Below, piece by piece: positions 23,633-38,040 of a DNA stretch of 64,000 nucleotides. The stretch's first letter is position 1, and every line of letters begins with the position of its first letter. Position numbers and translations under genes: made by a program. The notes under the pieces were generated by a model. It had not been told where the DNA came from. It did no database searches and saw nothing but the letters and a program-made list of their open reading frames with translations. The DNA is from Dimorphilus gyrociliatus (Eukaryota > Animalia > Annelida). The stretch spans positions 3,674,408-3,738,407 of the forward strand of contig CAJFCJ010000006.1 of assembly GCA_904063045.1 (NCBI GenBank). The letters are read 5' to 3'.

Positions 23633-24163
23633 TTACATGCATATAAAACAATACCTGTATATGCATGTTTAATATACATATGTATATAGAGAGACAAGTT
23701 CCACCTGTTACTCGCTCAACAATTTGAAAAAAAAAAAGATTTATGCAAATAAGCGTCCTTTTCTTTTCTTCCTCTTTATCTTTTTTTTTTCTTATCACCC
23801 TGTTAGCGTTCATTAAACTTAATGAAAAATTTAAAAATACTGACAATGAACGATTCTAATATACATAATATAAAGGAAATGTTCCTTGCATTAATATATA
23901 ATATACATTCTATAGCATATATGATGGAGAAACACTCGTCATTGTATGTGCACATGTAATTTGTGACGTCGAGAAAGTGCATCGATTTCTATATAAAAAC
24001 GCAAGCGACGTCTCTATGCCTCAGTTTTTCAGGTACTACACTATGTATACAACTTATACAGAATTATGTGCGATTAATATGATTGAATATAGGCTGATAT
24101 ATAGTTATCTTTTCAAGGAAGGATTTTTGTTGACTTTCTGGAGATTAATATAAAAGTCAGAAG

Positions 24164-24165
24164 CT

Positions 24166-24198
<33 letters not shown>
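24164..24198. repeat. (CT)n microsatellite upstream of the SLC6 gene
   Basis: Direct reading. Confidence 0.9.
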
Positions 24199-24202
<4 letters not shown>

Positions 24203-24369
24203 TTCCATGTCTCATTCGGCCTAATATTATATTTGACAATCTTCGTTTTCAGTATGCTTGAATAAAAGTTACTTTTAACATATTCTACTTTTTCATTTCC
24301 TTTCTCGCTTTTCTTCAAACGCCGATTACTGATCGATTTTCACTACAAGGAGGTTAATTAGAATTACGT

Positions 24370-26880
24370 ATGGAAAACGGTGACGAAAAGGTAGGTAATT
24401 ACAAAAAAGAGATGTGTTTAATTGACTAACTAGGTATAACATAGGAGCTTTATGCTAACCTATTTCTAATTTTCATTAAGGCAAAGGTTAACTCTGATAT
24501 ACCCTCGGAAGAAGAAGATATTGCGGTTAGAAACCGAGGAGTATGGCGGAGCAAAATAGATTTTTTTATGGCATTGTTAGGATCATCTTTATGCTTTGGT
24601 TCAGTTTGGAGATTCGGTTACAATTGCTATAAAAATGGCGGAGGAGCTTTTATTGTTCCCTATTTTATATTTTTAGTGGGGGCAGGAATACCTACAGTTT
24701 TCATGGAGATGCTAATCGGTCAATACAGTAGTCAGGGAATACTATCCGTTTGGAATGTTGTTCCACTATTCAAAGGAATAGGCATAGGTTTCATTCTAGT
24801 TGCGTTCTTTTTATCAACATGGTACGGAATAAATATGTCTTGGACAATTCTTTATTTGACTCAGTCGGCCAAACAATCGCCCAATTTTATTAGCTGCTGT
24901 AATGATTGGAATTCGAAGAGTGAGTAGAGATGGTCTCTCATATGATTTATAATAAAATAATTAATCTTTTTCTTTATTAATACAAATATAAAAAAAGAGA
25001 AAGATTGCTATCTATACCTCTATTTCAAAAGATTTTGGGTGTAGACTTCCTTTTTAAGTTCCTATACCTTTCAAATTCATAAAGATCATAGATTCTCTTT
25101 TTCTAGTGTATAATTTCAAATAATTAAATATTATTTCATACTTAACAGAATGCTGTGAATCGCAAATAATGATTCAGAATTGCAGTACTAATTTATCATT
25201 GTCGGTACTTGTTAAAGAATGTACAATTTGTTTGAAATCATGCAATATTAATAGAACAAATGCAAGCCTTATTGGTAATTTGAAAACACCTTATCAAGAA
25301 TATTTCGAGTAAAAGTCTTTTAATTTATGCATGTTGATACACTTGGCCTTTTAATGTGAAAAAAAAAACAAAAAATATTCTAAAGTCGATTCTTTTTTTT
25401 TCTTTTTATAGAAACGAAGTACTCAGATCGTTTAGGTCATTTTACATGAAAGATGATTGGTACCTCCTACTTTTTCTTGTTGTAATATGGTTGCTCATAT
25501 TCCTAACTTTATTAGGTGGTGTACGAGTTTTTGGAAGGGTATGTTATTATGTTCTTTTCTTTTTGTCATTTTTAATTAGCTCTTTAACTAGTTCTTCATT
25601 TTAGATTATGTGCTTTACAACATCGGTAATCTATATTTCAATTTTCGGGTTTTTAATAAGGATTCTATTATTCGATGGAGCTGAAGTTGGCCTAAAAACT
25701 TTCTTAAGAGCCGAATGGTCAAAAATTGGCACTGTATCGGCTTGGTTTGATGCAGCTCAACAAGCTATTTTTACTTTGGGACCTTGTATGGGAAGTATGG
25801 TTACACTGTCCAGTCATAATAGATTTACTGATAATTCATATAGAGTTATCGGTATGATGACAATATGCATTGTTCTAACATCTTTTTTTACCGGAGTTAT
25901 TACATTTGGTTTATCGGGTTATTTGGCACATATGAGAGAGTCGCCCATTGCATTAATCTTATCTGAATCAGACTCCTCTTTCGTAAGAATACCCGAAGCA
26001 TTGTATGGTATTTCTTCATCGAAATTTTGGCTAATATTTTTCTACGTTAATGTATTTTTTAATTTTTTCAATGGAACTTCGGTTCTTGTCCACACTGTAT
26101 ATACTTCGATTGCTGATGAATTGAGTTTTATACAGCGTCGACTGAGAATCGCAATTCTAGCAACAATCTGCTTTACAGCAGCCTCTCTGGGCTGTATCAC
26201 AATAACAAGACAAGGCAGCTTTATGACAGCAATTATGGAGAATTATATAAATGGAACGTCTATTGCTCTACTCGGTTTCTTGGAAGTTGCTTCAATCTCT
26301 TTCTTCTATGGAGTGAATAAATTAAAATCAAACGTTACTATAATGATGGGATACAAACCTGGAAATTGGTGGCGAACCTTTTGGCAAATAATAGCTCCAT
26401 TTAGTTTTATTGTAGCTATTTCTCTTATTCAAATATCCATTCTTAATTATAATTATTTAATCTATTACCAGTTTATTTTCATCTATTCATCAGTTGACCC
26501 TTTCTACGAGGGTAGAAAGTTCTATTATAACCTACCAAGCAGCGGTAAAATTTTATTGGTCTGCCTCCATATTCTGACTCTTCTTCCATTGATTTTTTAT
26601 ATGATTTATTGTCTTGTAAGAAAAACACGAGGAACTTTTCGAGAAGTGAATAGCACATTACCCCTTTTTTTTACTTTTAGTTTGTCGTTTTTTTTCATGC
26701 TTTTTACCGCAGAGATTGAAGATTGCATTAAAACCGACAAAGAATTGGATTCCAGTATGGGATATCAGCGAATTACTGGTTGGCCCAATGCCAGACTATA
26801 TTAAATCCGAACAGGAAGAATTGAAATTTAAGTTGATTTTACCAAGAAGAAAAAGTTCTTTATTATCGAATTCTTCCGAG
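24370..26880 (+). CDS. SLC6 unit 1 (N-terminal, degenerate ion/substrate sites)
   Basis: [77 protein letters not shown]: an SLC6 fold with 12 TM and an uninterrupted frame. Confidence 0.9.
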
Positions 26881-29800
26881 GTTTGCATCTTTTTTTTTAT
26901 TCTCTAATTAATCTAAACTTCTTCTGTTTTCAATTTTTCTAATCTGTAGAGTGTTTCTTCGGTTACTAGCGGTTTGCCTCCTATGAGAGATGACGGTCAA
27001 TGTGGAGAAGATATTGACACATGGTCTGTCGATTGGGAGGATGATGAGAACAAGCGTAGGGGTAATTGGGGTGGTAGGTGGGAATTTTTCCTATCGGGAA
27101 TAGGTTATTGTGTGGGTATTGGTAATGTCTGGAGGTTTCCCTATCTTGTCTATAAAAATGGAGGCGGTATAGTTGATTTAAGCTTAGGTTCTTTTCCAAA
27201 TCAAAAAGATCTCTTATGTTTTTTGCAGGAGCTTTCCTACTAACTTACGTCTTAATTCTAATATTTTGCGGTCTACCCATTTTCTATATGGAATTGATTC
27301 TTGGTCAATTCTCTAGTCTTGGTCCATTGACAGTATGGAGATTTTGCCCACTTTTTAAGGGGACTGGGTACGCAACCATAATCACTTTAACCCTAGTCTG
27401 CATCTACTATAACGTTATTAACGCTTGGTCTATCTTTTACCTCTTCGCTTCATTTACAAGAGGAGAATTACCTTGGCGTTCTTGCAAAAATTCCTTTAAT
27501 TCATTAAGTAAGTGTATGCTAGGAAGAGAACAATAGAAGAAAAGATAATCTGTAAAATTGTGGAATTTTTTCCAGATTGTGTCGAAAGTTTATTAACTAG
27601 GAAAGTTTGTAATCAAACGTTTAATGATACATCTTATCCAATTGATTGTTTTCCTTATCAAAATACGACCAATTCATCTATTAAATTCTCTACTGCGGCT
27701 GAAGAATACTTCTTGTAAGATTTAACTTGCTTCTAATGCTTAATCAATAATTGTAATTATACTTTGATATAACACAGCCGATACGTGCTAAATAAATCTG
27801 ATGGGATAGAAGATGTGGGTAGTATTGAATGGAGATTGGCATTGTGCTTGGGATTTTGCTGGTTTTTAGTTGCTTTAATACTATTAAAAGGTGTAAAAAG
27901 CGCTGGAAAAGTTGTCTACGTGACGGTTATTTTTCCACTCGTTATTTTAATTATCATTTGTATAAGATTTACAACACTTGGATCCGATGCCTACCTGAAA
28001 GGTTTAAGATATTACATTACTCCTAAATGGGAACGCCTTTCAGATGCACAAGTTTGGAGTGACGCCGCAGCACAGCTGTTCCTTTCTTTAGGTTTATGTA
28101 TCGGGGGCGTTATGTCAATGGCAAGTTACAATCGCTTTCATTACGATTGCTTAAAAGACGCCTATCTTATCTGCTTACTTGATCTAATAACTAGTCTTTT
28201 CTCTGGATTTGTTATGTTTTCAATTTTGGGTATTATGGCGGAGAAATTGTCTTTGCCAATCAGCGAAATTATCACCTCGAAATTCTCTTTAATTTTTATT
28301 GTTTGTCCAGAGGCATTGTCTGATCTTCCGTCGTCAAATGCCTGGTCCGCTTTATTCTATTTCATGTTAATTTGTTTAGCTGTTGACTCTCAATTTCTTA
28401 TGGTTCATTCCCTTGCAACTGCTGTTGTAGATGAATTCGAAAATCTGTTAAGAAAGAGACAAGTATACGTTGTAATGAGCATTTGTTTTATTTTATATCT
28501 GTTAGGCCTACCATTCTGTACTCGAAGCGGTTTCTACATGGTATATTTACTGGATTCATATGTTGTTAGTTGGTCTGTTGTATTAATTGGAGTCATTACC
28601 TGTATTGCTGTAAGTTGGATCTACAAAATGAAACTTTGGTCCTCTAATATTAGAGTAATGCTTGGTTCTGAGCCATCATTCTTTTGGAAAATTCAATGGT
28701 GGTTTACAGCACCAATTATACTAACTGTAAGTTGAAAGCCAGATTAAATTGGTTTATTTTTTATGCATACGTTTTCCTTTGATTTAGACTATTATGATCT
28801 TTGCGTGGGTTAAATACGAAGAGCCAACGGTTAATGCTTACTCATATCCACGTTGGGCAATAGGTATATCACTTTTACTGGGCTTACAACCGATGGCAGT
28901 TACAGTTGTAGGATTCTTTGTCCAAATATTAGGACGGTCAGAAGGATTTAAAGAGGTGAATAAAGTCGTTGAATTGTTAAATACCCAGAAATTTCTACTT
29001 TTTCCATAAATAATACATTAGGGTATTAGAGGAGCTCTAAAACCTAGTTCGAATTGGGGACCAGCACTTGCCAAATTTCGTCAAGTATGCGTTCTACCAT
29101 CAACGAACTCCACTATCGACTCATTAGATAGGACAGCTATGTGGGTCAAAGGTAATTGATTTACAATAAATAAACGAAAAAAATTGCGTGGGGTGTCGTC
29201 TATTTTTACTGTTTTTACAAGCCTATTTAGAAGTTTTAATCGCTTTTATAAATTTTTTATTACTCCTATTAAAGTAAGCTTTTCCCCAGGAATTTCTTCA
29301 GTTTTCGTTTCTGAACCCTTAAGCAACAAAGTACCTGATAAATCATTACATTTAAATGACTCGAAGCAAAAAGGACCACTCTACGATCATTTGGGAAATC
29401 CGCTGGCCAGATCGAAAAATAACTCATCGGCAAGCCTTTTACCCAGAGTTGTCAGCTTTAAAATAAATAAGCAGAGATTGTTACCTGGGAAGACATCTCC
29501 TAGTATAAGCACGGCTTCGGATGATGGATTTACAAGAGTTGTCTTTGACTTGGACTCTCCAATTGTCACTCCAAGAAGAGTGAATTCTCTAAGTAATTAT
29601 CTAGTTTTCAATAATTCATAATGTATTATCTAGATTCTTAATAAATAAAAATATAAATAGGAGAAAGATCGGTGAGAAAGGAAAGGAAAAGACGCCGAAG
29701 CAGAATGAGAATTATTGAAGAGAACGTTAAATTTGCAAGAGATAAAGCGACACAAACTGAAAACGGGGCGGAAACTTCTTCAATATCTAGTCGGCAAAGT

Positions 29801-29938
29801 CCAGAGGGTAGTGATACACCAACACATCCACTTAACAATTATAGGGTTTTGGAACCTCGAATAAGAATAATAGAGAATGGAGGATTCGATAATAAAGCCT
29901 TTCAGAAAGACGAGACACCTGTAGAAACCAAACTTTGA
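24370..29938 (+). CDS. Fused double SLC6 (neurotransmitter:sodium symporter) transporter, predicted 15 exons, ~1452 aa, 24 TM
   Basis: Exons 24370-24390, 24481-24919, 25149-25308, 25412-25538, 25605-26411, 26472-26645, 26713-26880, 26950-27166, 27229-27507, 27576-27714, 27778-28726, 28788-28955, 29022-29151, 29290-29592 and 29661-29938 are all GT-AG and phase-compatible (sum 4359 nt). There is no stop between the two SLC6 units when intron 26881-26949 is spliced. The protein ends ...PVETKL*. Confidence 0.75.
26950..29938 (+). CDS. SLC6 unit 2 (C-terminal, amino-acid-transporter type) with long cytoplasmic tail
   Basis: [101 protein letters not shown]. Confidence 0.93.
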
Positions 29939-30003
29939 CTACAATACTGCCTATATATACAGTATATATATAGCTTCTATATAAACACATCGATAATGTA
30001 AAA

Positions 30004-30632: not shown

Positions 30633-32450
30633 TTAAACGGCGGGTGTTATAGTTACAGTTCTGTTTCCATTTTGTTTATGATCGTGATTTCTCACTGCTC
30701 CGTGTCGATTAATCTGAACTTTGCGTTTTCTAGATCCATATTTATACCAGTATATCACTGCCAGTATAACGACAATTACAGCAAGAACGGGTACTATAAC
30801 GCCAATAACTATACCGGCTATGTTTCTTCCAGATTCTTCGCCGCTCCCTGAGCCTACGACGAAAGGAGAGCGAGTGATATTCGAAGTTACTATGTCCGTG
30901 TCAGCTGTAGTTGTCATGACCGTTGGACAAGCCTCCGATTTTAAACTTGAATTTTTGAAAGCGTTACCCGCGTCGTTCTTGGCTATGCACCGGAATAGCA
31001 GCAATGTACTGCAACCAGTTTTTACCACACCCTTGTAGTTTGCACTCCCTTTAAACAAGACTGTTATGTTCGCTAGAGGGCTTATTTGTACCGAGATATC
31101 TGGGAGAGGATCTCCGAAGCCCGTACAAAAGAATTCAATGCCATTTAGTATTTGTTCTATAGTAAAAATTTCAATTTTAGGCACAATGCATTTCAATTCG
31201 TGACGCCTTGACAATAATTCGAAATTTGACGGAGTAGAACAAACGCCAATTTTAAATCTCCTCCTCTGTCTTAAATCAATAGATAAAAGATAATCTTTTA
31301 ACCATTGAAGTTGGCAATTACAATGCAGTTTATTATTAGTTATATCCAATTCTCCTTTGTATAACTTTAAATAATGTTGATAAGTAATTGGGACAGATCT
31401 TATAAAATTGTTCCTTAATAACAAACGTCTTAATAATCTATTGACGTCGAATAATGCAAAATCGAAAAATTCAATCTGATTGTTTGATAGTTCGATTATT
31501 GTTAGATTCTTGTTGTGTTTGAATGTTGTCGACTGAATACCAGTAATGGCGTTATATTGTAGGTCAATAGCACCTAAATTACGACCAAATTTAAAATCGT
31601 TATCTCTTATCTCTCTAATGGAATTTTTCTGTAGACCAATAAATTGAAGAGATTCTGACTGATATCTATTAGAAATTTCTGTAAGACCAATATTATTGAG
31701 GAGTAAGTCCTTAATTCCAGTAACTCGATAGAGAACATTCCAAGCTCTATCTGATATCTCATTATCACTTAAATCCATTCTCCCCTCAGACATCTCTAAT
31801 CCATATAGAAATTCAATGTCCTTGAAATGGTTACCTTTTAAGGAGAGCTCTGAGAGAGATGTTCCAGTAAAAAAGCCCAAGGGCATATTTAAGGGTTTCG
31901 TATTGTAATTAATGTGCACAACTTTTAACGAAGCCTTTAAATTATCAATAAGCTTTCGTTGTAAACGTTCGATAGATAATTGGTTGGCATATAAAGACGT
32001 CAAATTTCCATCAAAAGCCAATGGATTTAAATCTTTTAATAAATTCCGTGATATAGAAAATAAATTCAAATCCAAACCTTTTAATAAATAATTAGGCAAG
32101 CTGGAAATCTTGTTATCAGCCAAGTACAACTTTTTCAAATTATATAGACCGTGAAAAGAGGTTGAGCTTAATTTTTCTATTTTACAATTGCTTAGGTCCA
32201 GCTGTTTTATTGAATTATAGGTAGAAAATTGATTGTTACCAATCTCCTTAATTTGGTTTCCATTCAGTAGTAAAGTCCTAATACCGTCCGGTATATTTAA
32301 AGGTACAGTAGTTAAATTCCTATAGGAACAATCAACAACAAATCCACTGCAATTGCATAATATAGGACAGCACGTTGCAAAACCCATCAACTCTACAAAG
32401 AGTAGCACGTCGATAATAGCCAGGAGATGGAAGTTTAAGAGATCTTTCAT
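30633..32450 (-). CDS. LRR + Ig-like type I membrane protein (LIG-type), single exon (the ORF opens at 32516; the signal peptide fits Met at 32450)
   Basis: MKDLLNFHLLAIIDVLLFVELMGFATC signal peptide, LRRNT CPILCNC...VDCS, LxxLxLxxNxI repeats, LRRCT NKLHCNCQLQWL, Ig-like CTGFGDPLP...RCIAKNDAG, TM IAGIVIGVIVPVLAVIVVILAVIYW, and a short tail. Confidence 0.9.
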   Translation of the reverse strand: MKDLLNFHLLAIIDVLLFVELMGFATCCPILCNCSGFVVDCSYRNLTTVPLNIPDGIRTLLLNGNQIKEIGNNQFSTYNSIKQLDLSNCKIEKLSSTSFHGLYNLKKLYLADNKISSLPNYLLKGLDLNLFSISRNLLKDLNPLAFDGNLTSLYANQLSIERLQRKLIDNLKASLKVVHINYNTKPLNMPLGFFTGTSLSELSLKGNHFKDIEFLYGLEMSEGRMDLSDNEISDRAWNVLYRVTGIKDLLLNNIGLTEISNRYQSESLQFIGLQKNSIREIRDNDFKFGRNLGAIDLQYNAITGIQSTTFKHNKNLTIIELSNNQIEFFDFALFDVNRLLRRLLLRNNFIRSVPITYQHYLKLYKGELDITNNKLHCNCQLQWLKDYLLSIDLRQRRRFKIGVCSTPSNFELLSRRHELKCIVPKIEIFTIEQILNGIEFFCTGFGDPLPDISVQISPLANITVLFKGSANYKGVVKTGCSTLLLFRCIAKNDAGNAFKNSSLKSEACPTVMTTTADTDIVTSNITRSPFVVGSGSGEESGRNIAGIVIGVIVPVLAVIVVILAVIYWYKYGSRKRKVQINRHGAVRNHDHKQNGNRTVTITPAV

Positions 32451-33666
32451 TGCATTCTTTCTTCTCCGAGACTTTCCTGTATCGCGTATCGAGTACACAC
32501 TATTAATGCTACACATATTGATTTCAGCCTATATAACCTATTCTTTCATCCCTATACATTTTTACGAGATGCTAATCACGTTTTAGCATGCCAAACATAA
32601 AGAAAATCTCCTATATCATTTTATCGTTCATTATACATAGATATATTTTAAGTTGGAAGTAAAAAAAAATCATTAACCTATAAAAATTAATATTTACTTA
32701 TCTAAAAAAAAGAAAAAACAAACTTGACAAACTTCTTTATATACAGTAAAAAAAAATTTTTTTAAATGTATTGGAAGAAGAAGAAGAAGAAAAAGAAGAA
32801 GGAGAGTAGGTGTAATAAAAAAGTATAAATAAACAATTCTACTTTTTGAATGAATTGTTCAAAAACAACGGATAGTACTATATATTAATATTTTAAGAAT
32901 AGTACGTAGAGAGGTATACATGTATATAACTGTTCTTATATATATAAATCATTGTATAAATATAAGCAACTTTGCAGCTATTGATTGATATTTAAAAAAC
33001 AAATCACAGTTATAACAAAAAGTGTTAAAAATTGAGAGAAAATTTCTTTATATATGCACCTTAGAGATCTTTAATAAATCCTATATATATTAAGAATCTA
33101 TGTATAAACATGTATCATACTACACCTGAAAAATCACGCTCTGTAGCATCTCCCAGGAATGTAGCGTTTTCTGCTACGTCACATCGATGACTAATAACCA
33201 GGTAAGTCCGTGCACAGTAGGAGAAAACAGTTATGCATACATGGGGCTTGATTATAGTCTTGTCTATGCGGCAGAGAGAAATAGAATTGCTGACTCTTTA
33301 ATATATTAAATTCTTAATAAAACTCTATTTATATATATTTATTACGTAAAATGCACCAAATGTGGTTATACGCTTAAATTAAGTATAAATAGTTCACATC
33401 TGTTTTCTTTTTTTTAATACTTTATACCTTCATCTTACTCTTTTCCCCTATATAGTTTTTTTTATAATATTTGCAGTTTTTTTTTCTACACAACTATATA
33501 CAACGGTCTTCTTTGTTTTCCTCTCCCCTCTTCCATCATTATTCATGTATCTTTTGTTTATATAATGCAACTTTCAAAAATTGTATTTATTTACCGTATA
33601 ATAATGAAATATAAGAATAAAAAATATAAAAAAAAAACAAAGTAATTCTAAAAGATTATACTTTCT

Positions 33667-36600
33667 TTATTCCATCTGAAGCTTTCGAAATTTTTTAGCA
33701 ATTTTCCAATTTCTAATAGCAAACGCTGCTAGTATAATAATAAAAAGGCAGATAAGCGAGAGTCCTACAGCTAAGTAGATTGTTGAATAGTCTGTTGAAT
33801 CTCCAGTAGAGTTAAGAGATTGTTTTTGAGGTGATGTAGTCTTTATTGATGTTTGTGTAGTTCGAGTCTGAGGGTCTTCGGTACTCTTGGATCGAATATT
33901 AATGATCTTAGTTTTACTAATGATTCCCGTACCGTTGGTAGGATTGGAAATGTCGCATCTTATAATTAGTCTTATTGTATTTTCGGTGTATTCGTAAGAG
34001 ACGAGCGCAGCTCCTCTACTCTCCGAAGAAGTCTTTCTTGTTCCAGAATAGCCTTCATCTTCTATACTGATTCGCGCACTATTTGAACAAATATCCCCAT
34101 TTCCACAGGAGACATCTACTCTCTCATCGTCCATAGTATAATTGAAGGAAATAATATCTCTAGGTGAACAGTTAAACCCTTCTCTAGGCATTTCATTCAA
34201 TAACCTTACTTGATCAATCTGAATAAGACAATACGGTGCGCTTATATTCTCATTACCGTATGACCACTCATAAAACCAAGCAACGTTGCAATCGCAGGTA
34301 AAAATATTTTCATTCAAATCAAAATATTTCATTGCAGGCCATATTTCTCCTATAGGTTGATTTGGCTTTGGTATAGTTTTTAACAAGTTTGAATTAAGGA
34401 ATAAACTTCTCAGCCTACTTCCAAAACCAGTAATGATATTTGCATCAAAAACAGAGATCTTATTAGAACTGAGTATAAGTACTTCCAGATTGGGAAATTT
34501 TTTTGAAATATTCAATTGATTTAGATGGGTAATTGAATTTTCTTTTAAATTCAAGTGAAGAATTTTAGGCATACTGGGCAATTGATCAATACTTATTAAT
34601 TTTGAATTGGTAATATTACAATATCGTAAAAAAGTCCAATCCATTTGTGGATGTAGTGGTAAACTTTCAAAATGATTATGATTTATTATAACATCAGTTG
34701 TTCTCACTCCATCTAGGAATTTTAGTTGAGATATTTCAGTATTAGACATATCTAATCTTTCCATTGCTTGTAATGTTGAAAAATCTAAACTATGCTGTAA
34801 TTTTGCCATAGGTATTGAATTAATGGCTAGATGACTGACATTCAAATGCATAACTACTTCTGACGGATCCCAATCAGATAATTTTCTGTTGTTACTGAGG
34901 AATAAATTCCTCATTGTTGAATTGGAAAATACACTATGATGAAGAGATTTCAACTGTAATGAACGAAGGTCAACGGTTATTAAGTGGAGACCTCTTACAA
35001 AATTTCTAGGCAGTTCTTGAATACCATTTGTAGACATTGAAATGTACTGTAGTTCGCGATTGTTTAAGAATATACCTTCCGGAATTGATTGAAGTTCATC
35101 GTTGTTCCAAATACTAATAGATTTTAGATTTCTCATCTTTGAAAAAGTATTTTTATGTAATGTTTTTAAATTACAATTCGAAAGTAGAATTTCCTCAAAA
35201 TTATCATATCCTTGAAATGATGAAGAGTCTAATACTTCCAAATTACCTTTATTAATAAACAACTTTGTAAATTGTGAATTAGCTGATAGTTTTGGTATTT
35301 CCATAATATTTTCATCGCTAGCTGGACAAGTAATACTTTGATCTCGACAATTACAGATTGTTGGACAATCTTCGTTTAGCGATGCTAGGGCTGGCGTATC
35401 GTCATCTGAAGGATTGCCAATATAGAAGGATATTTGATTAGAATTATCAGTTCTAATTGAGAATTGCTCATCGACTATTGTAAATTCTTGACTTTTGTTT
35501 TTGGAAGTAAATAGTTGTAAAGTTAATTTTTCGTTTAAATTACTTTTACACGTTAAAGAAACTTTGGAATTTCCCTTTTCAATAATTGTTACTTTTATTT
35601 TTGTTAGACTTTCTTCGATAGATGGCGCTTTAGTGCTTGTTGAAACGGCATTGGTAAGTGTAGTAGAGATGGGGGAGGCGCTAGTGGTTGACTCAGTGGA
35701 TTTTTTTGGTTCTTGAGACGACTCATTGTCACCCCTTGACGAAGAAGGCATTTGTGTAGTTGTCCATTGTAAACTGGATTTTTTCGTTTTACTTGACTCA
35801 CTTGTTACTTTAGTCGATCTTTCCTCTGTTACTTTCATTGTTCCTGCTGTGGTTGTGGCTTTTGTTGTTGTTGTTGTTGACAATGACGGTGACGTTGTTC
35901 TTGGTTCGGTATGATGTTCTGAAAGAGTAGAACTACCCTTTGATGATCTCCTAGTAGTTTTTGATTCTTGAGACGACTTATTGTCACCTCTTGACGAAGA
36001 AGGCATTTGTGTAGTTGTCCATTGTAAACTGGATTTTTTCGTTTTACTTGAATCACTTGTTACTTTTGTCGATCTGTCCTCTGTTACTTTCATTGTTGCT
36101 GCTGTAGTTGTGGCTTTTGTTGTTGCTGTTGTTGTTGCTGCTGTTGTTGTTTTTGACAATGACGGTGACGTTGTTCTTGGTTCGGTATGATGTTCTGAAA
36201 GAGTAGAACTACCCTTTGATGATCTCCTAGTAGTTTCAACGTTAACTGTAGTCTTAAAATTATCCATTGTTGAACTACTTTCAGGGAGAGGGGTAGTGGA
36301 CGGTGATGGGGTTAGGGTGGTTTTACTAAATGATTTAGTATTCACAACAGTTTTAGAGGTAGATGGAGTCGTCTCAAACTCTTTTGTTGGATTTGAGGAA
36401 GCTTTTAGAGTGGTTGGCTTGGTAGTACTTGATTTTCTGGTCATAGTTGTAGGAGTTGGCTGAGATCTTGTGATACCGAGTAGAGAAGTTAAGGTAATTA
36501 CAGCATCTACTGTATCCTTTTCGTTCCGAGCAACACAATAAGCGATCAAGTCTGAATGGACGCTGTTATCCCTTGTGTAAACGACTGATAATCTATTTCG

Positions 36601-38040
36601 CTTAAATTTCGGATCAGGATTCCGAACAGTAATTTTCTCCGTTTTTATAAGACCGTCTTCGCGGAAATGAATCTGAAGCATCGGTAAAGGATCGCCAGTT
36701 GCTTCACAAGTTAGTCTAACTGAAGTTTTCCCTATCAAAAACTTTGAGAAAGTCACAATTTGAGCCGCTACGCAAGAGAAATTTGATTCCTTCATATTAA
36801 TAAAATGACTAAACTGTGGCGTTTGACATTTAGTAGAAAAGAAAGAATAACTTCTTTGAGATTTTAGATAGTCATAAAGCCACCTTAGTTGGCAATTACA
36901 ATGGAATTTATTTCCGTTAAATTTCAATTGTAGTCCGTCCTGTAGCATGTCTGTCAATTTCTTTGAAAAGCCATGTTGTTCATTATATATTGTACGAAGT
37001 TTGCAGTAGTTAAAGTTAGCCGTTTTTAAATATGCTACATCTCTTGGGTGTAGTTCCGTAAAAAGATTATTAGAAAAATCAACCTTTGTCATTAAAGGGA
37101 ATAAACCAACTAAACCCTGACTTGGAATGGATTCTATTTTATTATAGGCAGCAGAGAGGGTTTTAATACGTGGGAAAGCTAGGGATAACAGATGTAGATC
37201 TTTCAAGCCAGTAGTTTCACAACTGAGGCTGTCTATACTAAAATTTGATGATTTTGTACTACTCCAATCAATCTGATTATTGCTTATATCTAGGTGTTTT
37301 GTGGTCAAGCCATTAAGTTTACTTAAATCCTTAAGGCCTGCGTTTCTCAATATTAGCTTATCCAAGCGTAAATTTTTGAAGGATAATCTGTTTTCCGGGT
37401 GAACGACGGGAACATTCGTAAAAGATACAACTTTAATCGAATTTCTCATCCACTGAAAAAACTCTCCGTTTGTCATTATCAGCTTGCTTGAGTTGATTAC
37501 AATCAATTCCTCAATCATTGCGTCAATAAATATGTCTCGTCTAATTTCTGTTAAACGATTAAAACCTATTTTCACCAACTTCATTGAATTTCCCCCAAGA
37601 AAACCATAATCAATAGTATGAAGAGAATTTCTCAGAAGAATCAAGGAACGAAGAGAATCTATTCTTCTAAACACATTTGCTCTAAGACGTTTGAATTTAT
37701 TACCAATTAGCGAGACTGATTTGATGGCTTTAGCCTCCCGGAAAGCTCTTTCTTCGATATCATACAACACCGAATAGGAAATAGTAACAGTCTCCAAGAA
37801 ATGATTATTCTTAAAGGCGTCATCCGGCAGCTTTTCAACCTTTGAATCAGTTAGAGAGAAAGACGTCGTATTAAGAGGAAGTGAAGGGAAATCGCCTTCA
37901 TAATCATAGCAGTCGACGTTTAATTTCCATCCTTCATATGTACAATCGCACCGTTGAGATTCTTCACAGATATTTTGGCGAGATAGATGGAAAATGACGA
38001 TAAATAATAGAGTCTTTAACAAAATACACTTCATCTTCAT
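33667..38040 (-). CDS. Large double LRR-Ig type I membrane protein with a central Ser/Thr mucin-like stalk, single exon, 1457 aa
   Basis: Signal peptide, LRRNT-LRRs-LRRCT (FHCNCQLRWL), Ig (TCEATGDPLP...YCVARN), Thr/Ser-rich region, second LRRNT (CPTICNC)-LRRs-LRRCT (FTCDCNVAWF), Ig-like segment, TM (IYLAVGLSLICLFIIILAAFAI), and a 15-aa tail. Confidence 0.9.
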   Translation of the reverse strand: MKMKCILLKTLLFIVIFHLSRQNICEESQRCDCTYEGWKLNVDCYDYEGDFPSLPLNTTSFSLTDSKVEKLPDDAFKNNHFLETVTISYSVLYDIEERAFREAKAIKSVSLIGNKFKRLRANVFRRIDSLRSLILLRNSLHTIDYGFLGGNSMKLVKIGFNRLTEIRRDIFIDAMIEELIVINSSKLIMTNGEFFQWMRNSIKVVSFTNVPVVHPENRLSFKNLRLDKLILRNAGLKDLSKLNGLTTKHLDISNNQIDWSSTKSSNFSIDSLSCETTGLKDLHLLSLAFPRIKTLSAAYNKIESIPSQGLVGLFPLMTKVDFSNNLFTELHPRDVAYLKTANFNYCKLRTIYNEQHGFSKKLTDMLQDGLQLKFNGNKFHCNCQLRWLYDYLKSQRSYSFFSTKCQTPQFSHFINMKESNFSCVAAQIVTFSKFLIGKTSVRLTCEATGDPLPMLQIHFREDGLIKTEKITVRNPDPKFKRNRLSVVYTRDNSVHSDLIAYCVARNEKDTVDAVITLTSLLGITRSQPTPTTMTRKSSTTKPTTLKASSNPTKEFETTPSTSKTVVNTKSFSKTTLTPSPSTTPLPESSSTMDNFKTTVNVETTRRSSKGSSTLSEHHTEPRTTSPSLSKTTTAATTTATTKATTTAATMKVTEDRSTKVTSDSSKTKKSSLQWTTTQMPSSSRGDNKSSQESKTTRRSSKGSSTLSEHHTEPRTTSPSLSTTTTTKATTTAGTMKVTEERSTKVTSESSKTKKSSLQWTTTQMPSSSRGDNESSQEPKKSTESTTSASPISTTLTNAVSTSTKAPSIEESLTKIKVTIIEKGNSKVSLTCKSNLNEKLTLQLFTSKNKSQEFTIVDEQFSIRTDNSNQISFYIGNPSDDDTPALASLNEDCPTICNCRDQSITCPASDENIMEIPKLSANSQFTKLFINKGNLEVLDSSSFQGYDNFEEILLSNCNLKTLHKNTFSKMRNLKSISIWNNDELQSIPEGIFLNNRELQYISMSTNGIQELPRNFVRGLHLITVDLRSLQLKSLHHSVFSNSTMRNLFLSNNRKLSDWDPSEVVMHLNVSHLAINSIPMAKLQHSLDFSTLQAMERLDMSNTEISQLKFLDGVRTTDVIINHNHFESLPLHPQMDWTFLRYCNITNSKLISIDQLPSMPKILHLNLKENSITHLNQLNISKKFPNLEVLILSSNKISVFDANIITGFGSRLRSLFLNSNLLKTIPKPNQPIGEIWPAMKYFDLNENIFTCDCNVAWFYEWSYGNENISAPYCLIQIDQVRLLNEMPREGFNCSPRDIISFNYTMDDERVDVSCGNGDICSNSARISIEDEGYSGTRKTSSESRGAALVSYEYTENTIRLIIRCDISNPTNGTGIISKTKIINIRSKSTEDPQTRTTQTSIKTTSPQKQSLNSTGDSTDYSTIYLAVGLSLICLFIIILAAFAIRNWKIAKKFRKLQME
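35710..36236. repeat. Near-identical in-frame tandem duplication (~251 and ~272 bp copies) inside the mucin stalk
   Basis: Copies at ~35710-35960 and ~35965-36236 both encode TTRRSSKGSSTLSEHHTEPRTTSPSLS..T..MKVTE.RSTKVTS.SSKTKKSSLQWTTTQMPSSSRGDN.SSQE. They differ by a few substitutions and a 21-bp indel in the poly-Thr/Ala tract. Confidence 0.95.

What the first reader, a model, noticed from the sequence alone, without database searches (positions are those of the whole stretch)
24571..26120. N-terminal SLC6 unit is intact but has lost the Na+/substrate-site residues
Seen (SERT numbering, aligned by eye): TM1 reads [14 protein letters not shown] versus canonical [14 protein letters not shown], so N101 becomes S, the Gly/Asp98 substrate position becomes C, and P106 becomes G. 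In TM7, N368 becomes I (ICIVLTSF). In TM8, LGLDS becomes NFFNG (D437 to N, S438 to G). The gate residues (RxxW, WRF Arg, Y176, Q332/F335, TM8 DE) are kept and the frame has no stop or frameshift. Established: these positions form the Na1/Na2 sites in LeuT/SERT. Inference: unit 1 is a pseudo-transporter (chaperone, scaffold, sensor or uncoupled/leak unit) acting on the fused active unit, rather than a decaying copy.
Basis: partly seen in the sequence, partly recalled or inferred. Interest (0 to 1): 0.7.

Follow-up and report, generated by a model that had tools for sequence, protein, structure and literature searches.

The report
Sodium-blind half of double transporter
In the tiny marine worm Dimorphilus gyrociliatus, one gene encodes two SLC6 amino-acid/neurotransmitter-type transporters joined head to tail; the first half has lost its sodium-binding residues yet is kept intact by selection, so it is a working but non-standard partner, not a dying copy.

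Summary
Unit 1 (window 24370-26880, seven exons) is an intact 12-helix SLC6 unit. Its substitutions, in SERT numbering, are N101S, C at the D98 position, P106G, N368I, D437N and S438G. The gate residues and the chloride-site residues are kept.

It is not decaying. In a related species every exon length and splice site is the same, there are no stops, and dN/dS is about 0.1.

The window is Dimorphilus gyrociliatus; the public model DgyrCDS5133 already joins both units. Fusion is supported by:
- a 69-nt GT..AG linker intron, conserved in the relative;
- no Met before TM1 of unit 2 in the relative;
- published absence of operons and trans-splicing in this species.
I have no RNA reads.

The new result is the family context. 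The same two-unit protein occurs in the annelid Owenia and in more than 25 molluscs, with a shared linker signature (P[DE]Y[VI]). Owenia's N-unit is fully canonical, while mollusc N-units have lost the Na-site residues with different replacements. The loss in Dimorphilus is therefore secondary and parallel.

"Pseudo-transporter" is plausible but untested; an uncoupled or differently coupled transporter remains open. Unit 2 also carries unusual gate substitutions. The scan had already noted the fusion on this same stretch (s1-080368). I found no paper describing natural tandem SLC6 proteins.

The parts
24370..24390 (+). Exon 1 of the double SLC6 gene (ATG, MENGDEK)
   Evidence: Identical in the relative L001 and in the deposited protein DgyrCDS5133.
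24481..24919 (+). Unit 1 exon 2: N-terminus and TM1-TM3. It holds the degenerate TM1 motif [14 protein letters not shown] (24580-24621).
   Evidence: Pfam SNF 141 bits. PDB alignments. Site table. dN/dS 0.10-0.13.
25149..25308 (+). Unit 1 exon 3: extracellular loop 2, with four N-glycosylation sequons and six Cys
   Evidence: All sequons and Cys are conserved in position in the relative. dN/dS 0.13-0.24. The deposited model skips this exon.
25412..25538 (+). Unit 1 exon 4: end of EL2 and TM4
   Evidence: Same length and splice sites in the relative; dN/dS 0.12-0.24.
25605..26411 (+). Unit 1 exon 5: TM5 to the first part of TM11. It holds N368I (25869-25871) and D437N/S438G (26070-26075).
   Evidence: Pfam SNF 159 bits. 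NET alignment. Site table. dN/dS 0.07-0.09.
26472..26645 (+). Unit 1 exon 6: end of TM11, EL6 and TM12. It follows a 60-nt intron (26412-26471) at the same position as the intron in unit 2.
   Evidence: GT..AG and exon length conserved in the relative, where the intron is 72 nt. Aligns with unit 2 exon 12.
26713..26880 (+). Unit 1 exon 7: C-tail and linker, with RLK..P..W and the signatures MPDYI and L..KLILP. It has no stop codon.
   Evidence: 86% aa identity to the relative, dN/dS 0.06. The P[DE]Y[VI] signature occurs only in the two-unit family among about 296 proteins.
26881..26949 (+). Linker intron (69 nt, GT..AG) that joins unit 1 to unit 2 in frame
   Evidence: Donor, acceptor and phase are conserved in the relative, where it is 61 nt. 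If retained it gives a stop. The deposited model splices it.
26950..27166 (+). Exon 8: linker plus the N-terminus and TM1 of unit 2 (canonical [14 protein letters not shown])
   Evidence: 93% aa identity to the relative. The relative has no Met in this exon. The [19 protein letters not shown] stretch is shared with Owenia.
27229..29151 (+). Unit 2 exons 9-13 (27229-27507, 27576-27714, 27778-28726, 28788-28955, 29022-29151): TM2-TM12 and the tail of the C-type unit
   Evidence: Pfam SNF 115 + 328 bits. Best PDB matches are GlyT2, GlyT1 and PROT. dN/dS 0.08.
29290..29938 (+). Exons 14-15 (29290-29592, 29661-29938): long cytosolic C-terminal tail, stop codon at 29936-29938
   Evidence: Match the deposited protein DgyrCDS5133.

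Best explanation
Unit 1 is the N-terminal half of an ancient two-unit (about 24-helix) SLC6 protein. Annelids (Owenia, Dimorphilus) and molluscs share this architecture.

Shown:
- The half is intact, spliced in frame to the second half, and under strong purifying selection.
- It has lost the side-chain ligands of both sodium sites: N27S and N286I at Na1, T354N and S355G at Na2 (LeuT numbering).
- It has also lost the Gly/Asp substrate position (now C).
- It keeps both gates, the chloride-site residues and a glycosylated EL2.
- The loss is secondary. The Owenia ortholog is canonical, and mollusc N-halves lost the same sites independently.

Inferred: unit 1 no longer performs Na+-coupled symport. 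It serves as a built-in partner protomer of the C-terminal half, which keeps its sodium sites and belongs to the GlyT/PROT-like group. The arrangement would be a natural SLC6 'concatemer' with one coupled and one uncoupled protomer. The uncoupled half most likely still changes conformation, and may bind a ligand. It would tune folding, ER export, or the transport cycle of its neighbour.
For: Residue mapping.

Selection and conservation:
- dN/dS is 0.106 over 630 codons for unit 1, against 0.079 for unit 2.
- Exon lengths and GT/AG sites are all identical in the relative.
- Per-exon ML and YN00 estimates are 0.03-0.24.
- The EL2 sequons and Cys are conserved.

Fusion:
- The linker intron and its phase are conserved, and the relative has no Met in exon 8.
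- The public model DgyrCDS5133 (P0195) is this gene and is fused at the same junction.
- PMC7854359 reports no operons or trans-splicing in this species and a median intron of 66 bp.

Family:
- Two-unit orthologs occur in Owenia and in more than 25 molluscs.
- The linker signature is found only in this family.
- Every unit-1 exon scores best against the Owenia N-unit.
- The N-units, including unit 1 and Owenia N, form one group under the site-heterogeneous model, SH-aLRT 94.

Degeneracy: unit 1 keeps 69% of 75 family-conserved columns. Mollusc N-units keep 57-68%, Owenia N keeps 95% and unit 2 keeps 84%.

Background: SLC6 oligomers and an engineered SERT-GAT1 concatemer show functional coupling between protomers (PMC8247324).
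Against: - Fusion therefore rests on comparative evidence and annotation.
- There is no functional assay. Ser at the N27 position and Asn at the T354 position could still offer oxygen ligands.
- The intact gates, the chloride site and the conserved TM1/TM6 core fit an active carrier at least as well as a passive scaffold.
- Tree placement of unit 1 is not decisive. A unit 1 + unit 2 clade is not rejected (AU p 0.82, 0.60, 0.45), and the two units share a few rare residues, for example a TM8 His.
- In the scallop a 24-kb intron separates the two units, so an independent C-unit transcript is conceivable there.
Confidence: 0.6

Rival explanations
1. Unit 1 is still a working carrier with changed coupling. 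It could be a uniporter or leak pathway, be chloride-, proton- or K+-dependent, or use only one remaining cation site. The protein would then be two different transporters in one chain.
For: All gate residues are kept (R5, R30, F253, Y268, D369, D404), as are the substrate Tyr (Y108) and the chloride-site residues. The TM1/TM6 core is almost invariant between the two species. Ser and Asn replacements could still coordinate an ion. Purifying selection is as strong as in unit 2.
Against: S355G and N286I/T remove ligands outright, and 0 of 37 other SLC6 proteins lack a hydroxyl at the S355 position. The N286 position differs between two close species (I versus T). Orthologous mollusc N-units vary freely at these sites and at the TM1 hinge glycine, which argues against a conserved ion or substrate site in the N-half.
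Confidence: 0.28
2. Units 1 and 2 are two separate neighbouring genes (tandem paralogs). The fused model would be an annotation artefact.
For: In the window exon 8 contains an in-frame ATG (LPPMRDDG). If the linker intron is retained, unit 1 ends at a stop after 8 codons. Other tandem SLC6 pairs exist in this genome as separate canonical genes, for example on C18.
Against: - Only 69 nt separate the units, which leaves no room for a promoter.
- Operons and trans-splicing are reported absent in this species.
- The relative has no Met in exon 8 before TM1.
- The donor, acceptor and phase of the linker intron are conserved.
- The linker exons are the best-conserved parts of the gene, at 86-93% aa identity.
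- Independent pipelines in more than 25 species predict the fusion.
Confidence: 0.07
3. Unit 1 is a decaying duplicate (a pseudo-exon block) carried along with the functional unit 2.
For: The Na-site residues are lost. Unit 1 keeps only 69% of family-conserved columns, and its stem branch is long, 2.1 against 0.8 for unit 2.
Against: There are no stops or frameshifts in either species at dS of about 1.3. dN/dS is about 0.1. All exon lengths are identical, and the glycosylation sequons and Cys are conserved.
Confidence: 0.02

Closest known systems
Canonical SLC6/NSS transporters (LeuT, dDAT, hSERT, GlyT1/2, PROT)
   Same: Same fold and family (PF00209). TM1/TM6 unwound motifs, both gates, the chloride-site residues and a glycosylated EL2 are all present. 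Unit 2 is closest to GlyT2, GlyT1 and PROT.
   Different: Unit 1 lacks the side-chain ligands of Na1 (N27, N286) and Na2 (T354/D437, S355/S438) and the Gly/Asp substrate position. It is not a free-standing 12-helix protein but the first half of a chain of about 24 helices.
Two-unit SLC6 proteins of molluscs and Owenia, annotated only as 'uncharacterized protein' or 'Transporter' (e.g. XP_060064335.1 Ylistrum, XP_059161224.1 Physella, Owenia P0177)
   Same: Same architecture and the same linker signature W-x(8-16)-P[DE]Y[VI]. The C-unit has Asp at the TM7 Na1 position. The N-unit is more divergent than the C-unit, except in Owenia.
   Different: Dimorphilus unit 1 keeps the R30-D404 gate pair, Q250 and the TM1 hinge Gly, which most mollusc N-units have lost. 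Its linker is about 40 residues shorter. Its Na-site replacements (S, I, N, G) differ from those of molluscs.
Engineered SLC6 concatemers and native SLC6 oligomers (hSERT-rGAT1 concatemer; review PMC8247324)
   Same: Two SLC6 protomers held together through a cytosolic link. The literature shows that neighbouring protomers can influence each other.
   Different: Here the concatemer is natural, ancient, and asymmetric, with one protomer lacking its Na sites. The engineered ones join two active transporters.
ABC transporters with one degenerate nucleotide-binding site (CFTR, TAP1/2, TM287/288). This is an analogy from general knowledge and was not tested here.
   Same: A duplicated module in which one copy has lost its catalytic or coupling residues but stays under selection as a regulatory or structural partner.
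   Different: The fold and energy source are unrelated, and no evidence here shows allosteric coupling between the two SLC6 halves.

Membership tests
SLC6 / NSS (Pfam PF00209 SNF) | Sequence match to the family profile above the curated cut-off | tested here: met
   Unit 1 exons E2 and E5 score 141 and 159 bits against a cut-off of 27. Unit 2 exons score 48, 115 and 328 bits.
SLC6 / NSS (Pfam PF00209 SNF) | Full 12-helix unit with cytosolic ends | tested here: met
   Exons E2-E7 align over TM1-TM12 and the tail of family members. The EL2 sequons are conserved. No 3-D model was made, because the spliced protein has no reference.
SLC6 / NSS (Pfam PF00209 SNF) | Na1 site side chains (LeuT N27, T254, N286) | tested here: not met
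   Unit 1 has S, T and I (T in the relative) at these positions. Only T254 is compatible.
SLC6 / NSS (Pfam PF00209 SNF) | Na2 site side chains (LeuT T354, S355 = SERT D437, S438) | tested here: not met
   Unit 1 has N and G. In 37 other SLC6 proteins the second position is always S or T.
SLC6 / NSS (Pfam PF00209 SNF) | Extracellular and intracellular gate residues (R30-D404, F253, R5-D369, Y268) | tested here: met
   All are kept in unit 1 and in the relative.
Chloride-dependent eukaryotic SLC6 | Chloride-site residues (SERT Y121, Q332, S336, S372) | tested here: met
   Unit 1 has Y, Q, T and S. The relative has F at the Y121 position.
Spiralian two-unit SLC6 family (unnamed) | Two SNF units in one reading frame | tested here: met
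   In-frame GT..AG linker intron conserved in the relative; no Met in the relative's exon 8; the deposited model is fused. No RNA reads were available.
Spiralian two-unit SLC6 family (unnamed) | N-unit tail signature W-x(8-16)-P[DE]Y[VI], followed by L..[KN]L[IY][IL]P | tested here: met
   MPDYI lies at the same spacing from the Trp as in molluscs. Among about 296 proteins only family members carry the signature.
Spiralian two-unit SLC6 family (unnamed) | C-unit of the GlyT/PROT-like type with Asp at the TM7 Na1 position | tested here: met
   Unit 2 has D, as do 15 of 15 mollusc C-units and the Owenia C-unit; 5 of 37 other SLC6 proteins do.
Spiralian two-unit SLC6 family (unnamed) | Unit 1 groups with the N-units in a tree | tested here: inconclusive
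   The PMSF tree gives the N-unit group, including unit 1 and Owenia N, SH-aLRT 94. AU tests do not reject a unit 1 + unit 2 clade. Pairwise scores favour Owenia N for every exon.
Processed or decaying pseudogene | Stops, frameshifts or neutral evolution (dN/dS near 1) | tested here: not met
   No stops in two species; dN/dS about 0.1.

The most novel reading that the evidence does not exclude
The two-unit SLC6 protein of annelids and molluscs would be a natural asymmetric transporter dimer. After fusion, the N-half repeatedly, and independently in Dimorphilus and in molluscs, gave up sodium coupling and became an allosteric or sensor protomer. That protomer would gate or tune the sodium-coupled C-half, which in the same lineages lost its TM10 gate acid. 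Owenia, with both halves canonical, would preserve the ancestral state. This would be the first natural case of obligate functional coupling between SLC6 protomers.
Probability: 0.3. Interest if true: 0.8.

Novelty: new variant of a known kind. Interest (0 to 1): 0.62.

Why it matters
Whether neighbouring SLC6 protomers talk to each other is a long-standing question. It has been studied so far with engineered concatemers and cross-linking (PMC8247324).

This family is a natural series for that question:
- one ortholog with both halves canonical (Owenia);
- many with an N-half that has lost its Na sites, to different degrees and with different residues (Dimorphilus, chiton, octopus, gastropods, bivalves).

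If the N-half regulates the C-half, comparing these orthologs in oocytes would show directly what an uncoupled protomer contributes.

The result also corrects a public gene model. DgyrCDS5133 skips four conserved helices of unit 1.

If unit 1 turns out to be merely a second transporter with altered coupling, the interest is smaller but still real. It would be an SLC6 member working without the canonical Na1/Na2 ligands.

Tried and rejected
- Pseudogene reading: rejected.
- Operon or trans-spliced two-gene reading: rejected on the published absence of both in this species and on the missing Met in the relative.
- Recent lineage-specific tandem duplication (unit 1 sister to unit 2): trees cannot reject it. 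I consider it unlikely because of the linker signature, the position in a shared architecture, and the best similarity of all unit-1 exons to the Owenia N-unit. Partial gene conversion between the units could explain the few shared rare residues.
- My own error, corrected: I read a TM4 column as the TM3 substrate Tyr and thought that Y176 was lost in unit 1 and that unit 2 had Ala there.
- Synapomorphy counting was uninformative: 2 columns shared with N-units against 5 with unit 2.
- Literature: five searches found no description of natural tandem SLC6 proteins.
- The look-up of encoding contigs found no record for the Owenia protein.
I worked exon by exon by reference, and used the deposited model P0195 where a whole protein was needed. 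For that reason no structure prediction of unit 1 was made.
Full report
**What is there.** The window is AT-rich eukaryotic DNA with introns of about 60-230 nt. Between 24370 and 29938 on the + strand lies one gene of 15 exons with two complete SLC6 (PF00209) units in tandem.
- Unit 1 is exons E1-E7: 24370-24390, 24481-24919, 25149-25308, 25412-25538, 25605-26411, 26472-26645, 26713-26880.
- Unit 2 starts in E8 (26950-27166), after a 69-nt GT..AG intron, and runs to the stop at 29936-29938.
- The public protein DgyrCDS5133 of Dimorphilus gyrociliatus (P0195, 1236 aa) is identical to these exons wherever it uses them. The window is therefore from that annelid. This fits the 78-Mb assembly and the published 73.8-Mb genome with a median intron of 66 bp (PMC7854359).

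I sent no joined spliced protein to any tool. All searches were made exon by exon by reference, or with P0195.

**The observation.**
- Changed in LeuT/hSERT numbering: N21/Y95 to S, A22/A96 to S, V23/V97 to L, G24/D98 to C, N27/N101 to S, P106 to G, N109/N177 to G, N286/N368 to I, A351/L434 to N, T354/D437 to N, S355/S438 to G.
- Kept gate and substrate residues: R5, R30, Y108 (Y176), F253, Y268, D369, D404.
- Kept chloride-site residues: Y47, Q250, T254 and the Ser at the E290 position.
- I first misread a TM4 column as the TM3 Tyr and corrected this.
- Unit 1 keeps 69% of 75 columns that are at least 85% conserved in other SLC6 proteins; unit 2 keeps 84%.

**Not a decaying copy.** A 21-kb Logan contig from an unidentified relative (L001, found through P0001) is colinear with 24001-29939.
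- All 13 compared exons have the same splice sites. All have the same length except E10, which is 12 nt longer in the relative, and none has a stop.
- Introns are 40-77% identical and differ in length.
- Nei-Gojobori dN/dS is 0.106 for unit 1 (630 codons, 77% aa identity, dS about 1.3). It is 0.079 for unit 2 (579 codons, 86%).
- ML and YN00 estimates per exon range from 0.03 to 0.24. dS is partly saturated, so the ratios are approximate, but they are far below 1.
- In the EL2 exon all four N-x-S/T sequons and all six Cys keep their positions although neighbouring residues change. This argues for a folded, glycosylated loop.
- The degenerate motifs themselves are identical in both species ([20 protein letters not shown]). 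Only the N286 position differs (I versus T).

**Fused or two genes?** I could not obtain RNA reads. Five lines of evidence favour fusion:
- The linker intron's donor (GAG|GTTT), acceptor (..AG|AGT) and phase are conserved, while its length is not: 69 versus 61 nt.
- The linker exons are among the most conserved parts of the gene: E7 86% and E8 93% aa identity, dN/dS about 0.06-0.07.
- The Met in E8 of the window (LPPMRDDG) is Glu in the relative (LPPEKDDG). That frame has no Met between the last intron stop and TM1 of unit 2.
- 69 nt leave no room for a promoter, and the genome paper reports no operons or trans-splicing.
- The deposited model is fused at exactly this junction.

That model, however, uses internal GT/AG sites, with intron bounds at 24788 and 25515 and a donor at 26334. 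It thereby drops TM3, EL2, most of TM4 and TM11-TM12 of unit 1. Those segments are conserved and selected, so I prefer the full 12-helix unit.

**Family context (the main new result).** A whole-library HMMER search with E5, followed by word searches, found two-unit SLC6 proteins in these groups:
- the basal annelid Owenia fusiformis (P0177, 1623 aa);
- bivalves (scallops, oysters, mussels, unionids, venerids, Dreissena, Mya);
- gastropods (Physella, Haliotis, Littorina);
- Octopus and a chiton.

All share a signature in the tail of the N-unit, W-x(8-16)-P[DE]Y[VI], at the same spacing as MPDYI in Dimorphilus. Among about 296 fetched proteins only this family carries it.

Dimorphilus and Owenia also share ..IDT.S.DWE.DENK.RGNW before TM1 of the C-unit. 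All C-units, including unit 2, have Asp at the TM7 Na1 position.

Every unit-1 exon scores best against the Owenia N-unit, and every unit-2 exon scores best against the Owenia C-unit or Lingula.

With a site-heterogeneous model the N-units, including unit 1 and Owenia N, form one group (SH-aLRT 94), and the C-units with unit 2 form another (93). Unit 1 sits on a very long stem, 2.1 changes per site against 0.8 for unit 2. AU tests do not reject a unit 1 + unit 2 clade. The tree alone is therefore inconclusive, and orthology rests mainly on architecture, linker and similarity.

**Parallel loss.** The Owenia N-unit is canonical at all 23 functional positions examined and keeps 95% of the conserved columns. 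Mollusc N-units keep 57-68%. The residues they carry at the same sites are varied:

| Position (LeuT) | Residues in mollusc N-units |
|---|---|
| N27 | S/G/C/T/N |
| N286 | H/N/S |
| T354 | D/H/G/S/L/N |
| S355 | T/A/G/Q/R/S |

The replacements differ between molluscs and Dimorphilus, and among molluscs. The simplest reading is that sodium coupling of the N-half became dispensable after fusion and eroded independently.

Dimorphilus is less extreme than most molluscs. It keeps R30, Q250 and the TM1 hinge Gly, which many mollusc N-units have lost.

One pattern is unexplained. C-units of molluscs and Dimorphilus, but not of Owenia, have lost the TM10 acidic gate residue (M/V/A/L/T), while all N-units keep it. 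Unit 2 also has Y268L and F253L.

**How it most likely works.**
- Shown: an intact, selected unit that lacks its Na-site ligands and is fused to a unit that keeps them.
- Established background: SLC6 termini are cytosolic, so a tandem chain keeps the topology. N27/N286 and T354/S355 are the Na1/Na2 side-chain ligands in LeuT and its eukaryotic relatives. SLC6 transporters oligomerise, and an engineered SERT-GAT1 concatemer shows cross-talk between protomers (PMC8247324).
- Inferred: unit 1 no longer does Na+-coupled symport and acts as a built-in partner protomer. Because its gates, chloride site and TM1/TM6 core are conserved, it probably still isomerises or binds something rather than being an inert scaffold.
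- I put about 0.6 on this reading, about 0.28 on an active carrier with altered coupling, about 0.07 on two separate genes, and about 0.02 on decay.

**Novelty.** The gene and its orthologs sit in public databases as 'Transporter' or 'uncharacterized protein'. Five full-text searches found no paper on natural tandem SLC6 proteins. The scan's own notes had already flagged the fusion on this stretch (s1-080368). I class the finding as a new variant of a known kind.

Noticed in passing
window 24788-25515 and 26334-26712: The deposited model DgyrCDS5133 splices from an internal GT in exon 2 (first intron base 24788) to an internal AG in exon 4 (exon resumes at 25516), and from an internal GT in exon 5 (26334) to exon 7. 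It thereby drops TM3, EL2, most of TM4 and TM11-TM12 of unit 1. The skipped parts are conserved and under purifying selection in the relative. The model is therefore probably wrong, or a minor isoform.
   Followed up: partly
window 27778-28726 (unit 2, exon 11): Unit 2 is not fully canonical. It has TM7 N286D, has lost the TM10 acidic gate residue (T; M in the relative), and has Y268L and F253L. Mollusc C-units also lack the TM10 acid, while all N-units keep it, and Owenia keeps it in both halves. The reason for this complementary pattern is unknown.
   Followed up: partly
window about 26090-26100 (unit 1 TM8) and about 28400 (unit 2 TM8): Both units carry His (LVHT / MVHS) where nearly all SLC6 proteins have Glu. 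None of 37 other SLC6 proteins and none of the mollusc C-units has His there. This could reflect gene conversion between the halves or co-adaptation.
   Followed up: no
window 26881-26949, 27715-27777 and 24001-24369: The linker intron (74% identical to the relative), the intron 27715-27777 (77%) and the 370 nt upstream of the ATG (75%) are more conserved than the other introns (40-67%). They may hold splicing or regulatory signals. A (CT)n run lies at about 24165-24200.
   Followed up: no
G000:C18:126000-134000 (L005): A second tandem pair of SLC6 genes lies about 1.3 kb apart in the same genome. Both have canonical TM1 ([10 protein letters not shown]) and TM6-TM8 motifs, and they look like two separate genes rather than a fusion.
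   Followed up: partly
L004 (Ylistrum balloti locus) 58488-82096: In the scallop the exon with the N-unit tail and the first detected C-unit exon are about 24 kb apart, so the fusion there depends on a long intron. The N-tail exon starts at the same position (R[IL]K..) as Dimorphilus exon 7.
   Followed up: partly
window 30633-32516 and 33667-38040, minus strand: Two long, almost intron-free ORFs (627 and 1457 aa) encode leucine-rich-repeat membrane proteins. The larger one holds a duplicated Ser/Thr-rich, mucin-like block.
   Followed up: no
proteins P0215, P0216, P0218, P0221, P0184, P0004: Other two-unit SLC6 models occur in frogs, a tick, the rotifer Brachionus, Solemya and Gigantopelta. 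Both of their units look canonical and they lack the P[DE]Y[VI] linker signature. They may be separate fusion events or merged tandem genes.
   Followed up: no
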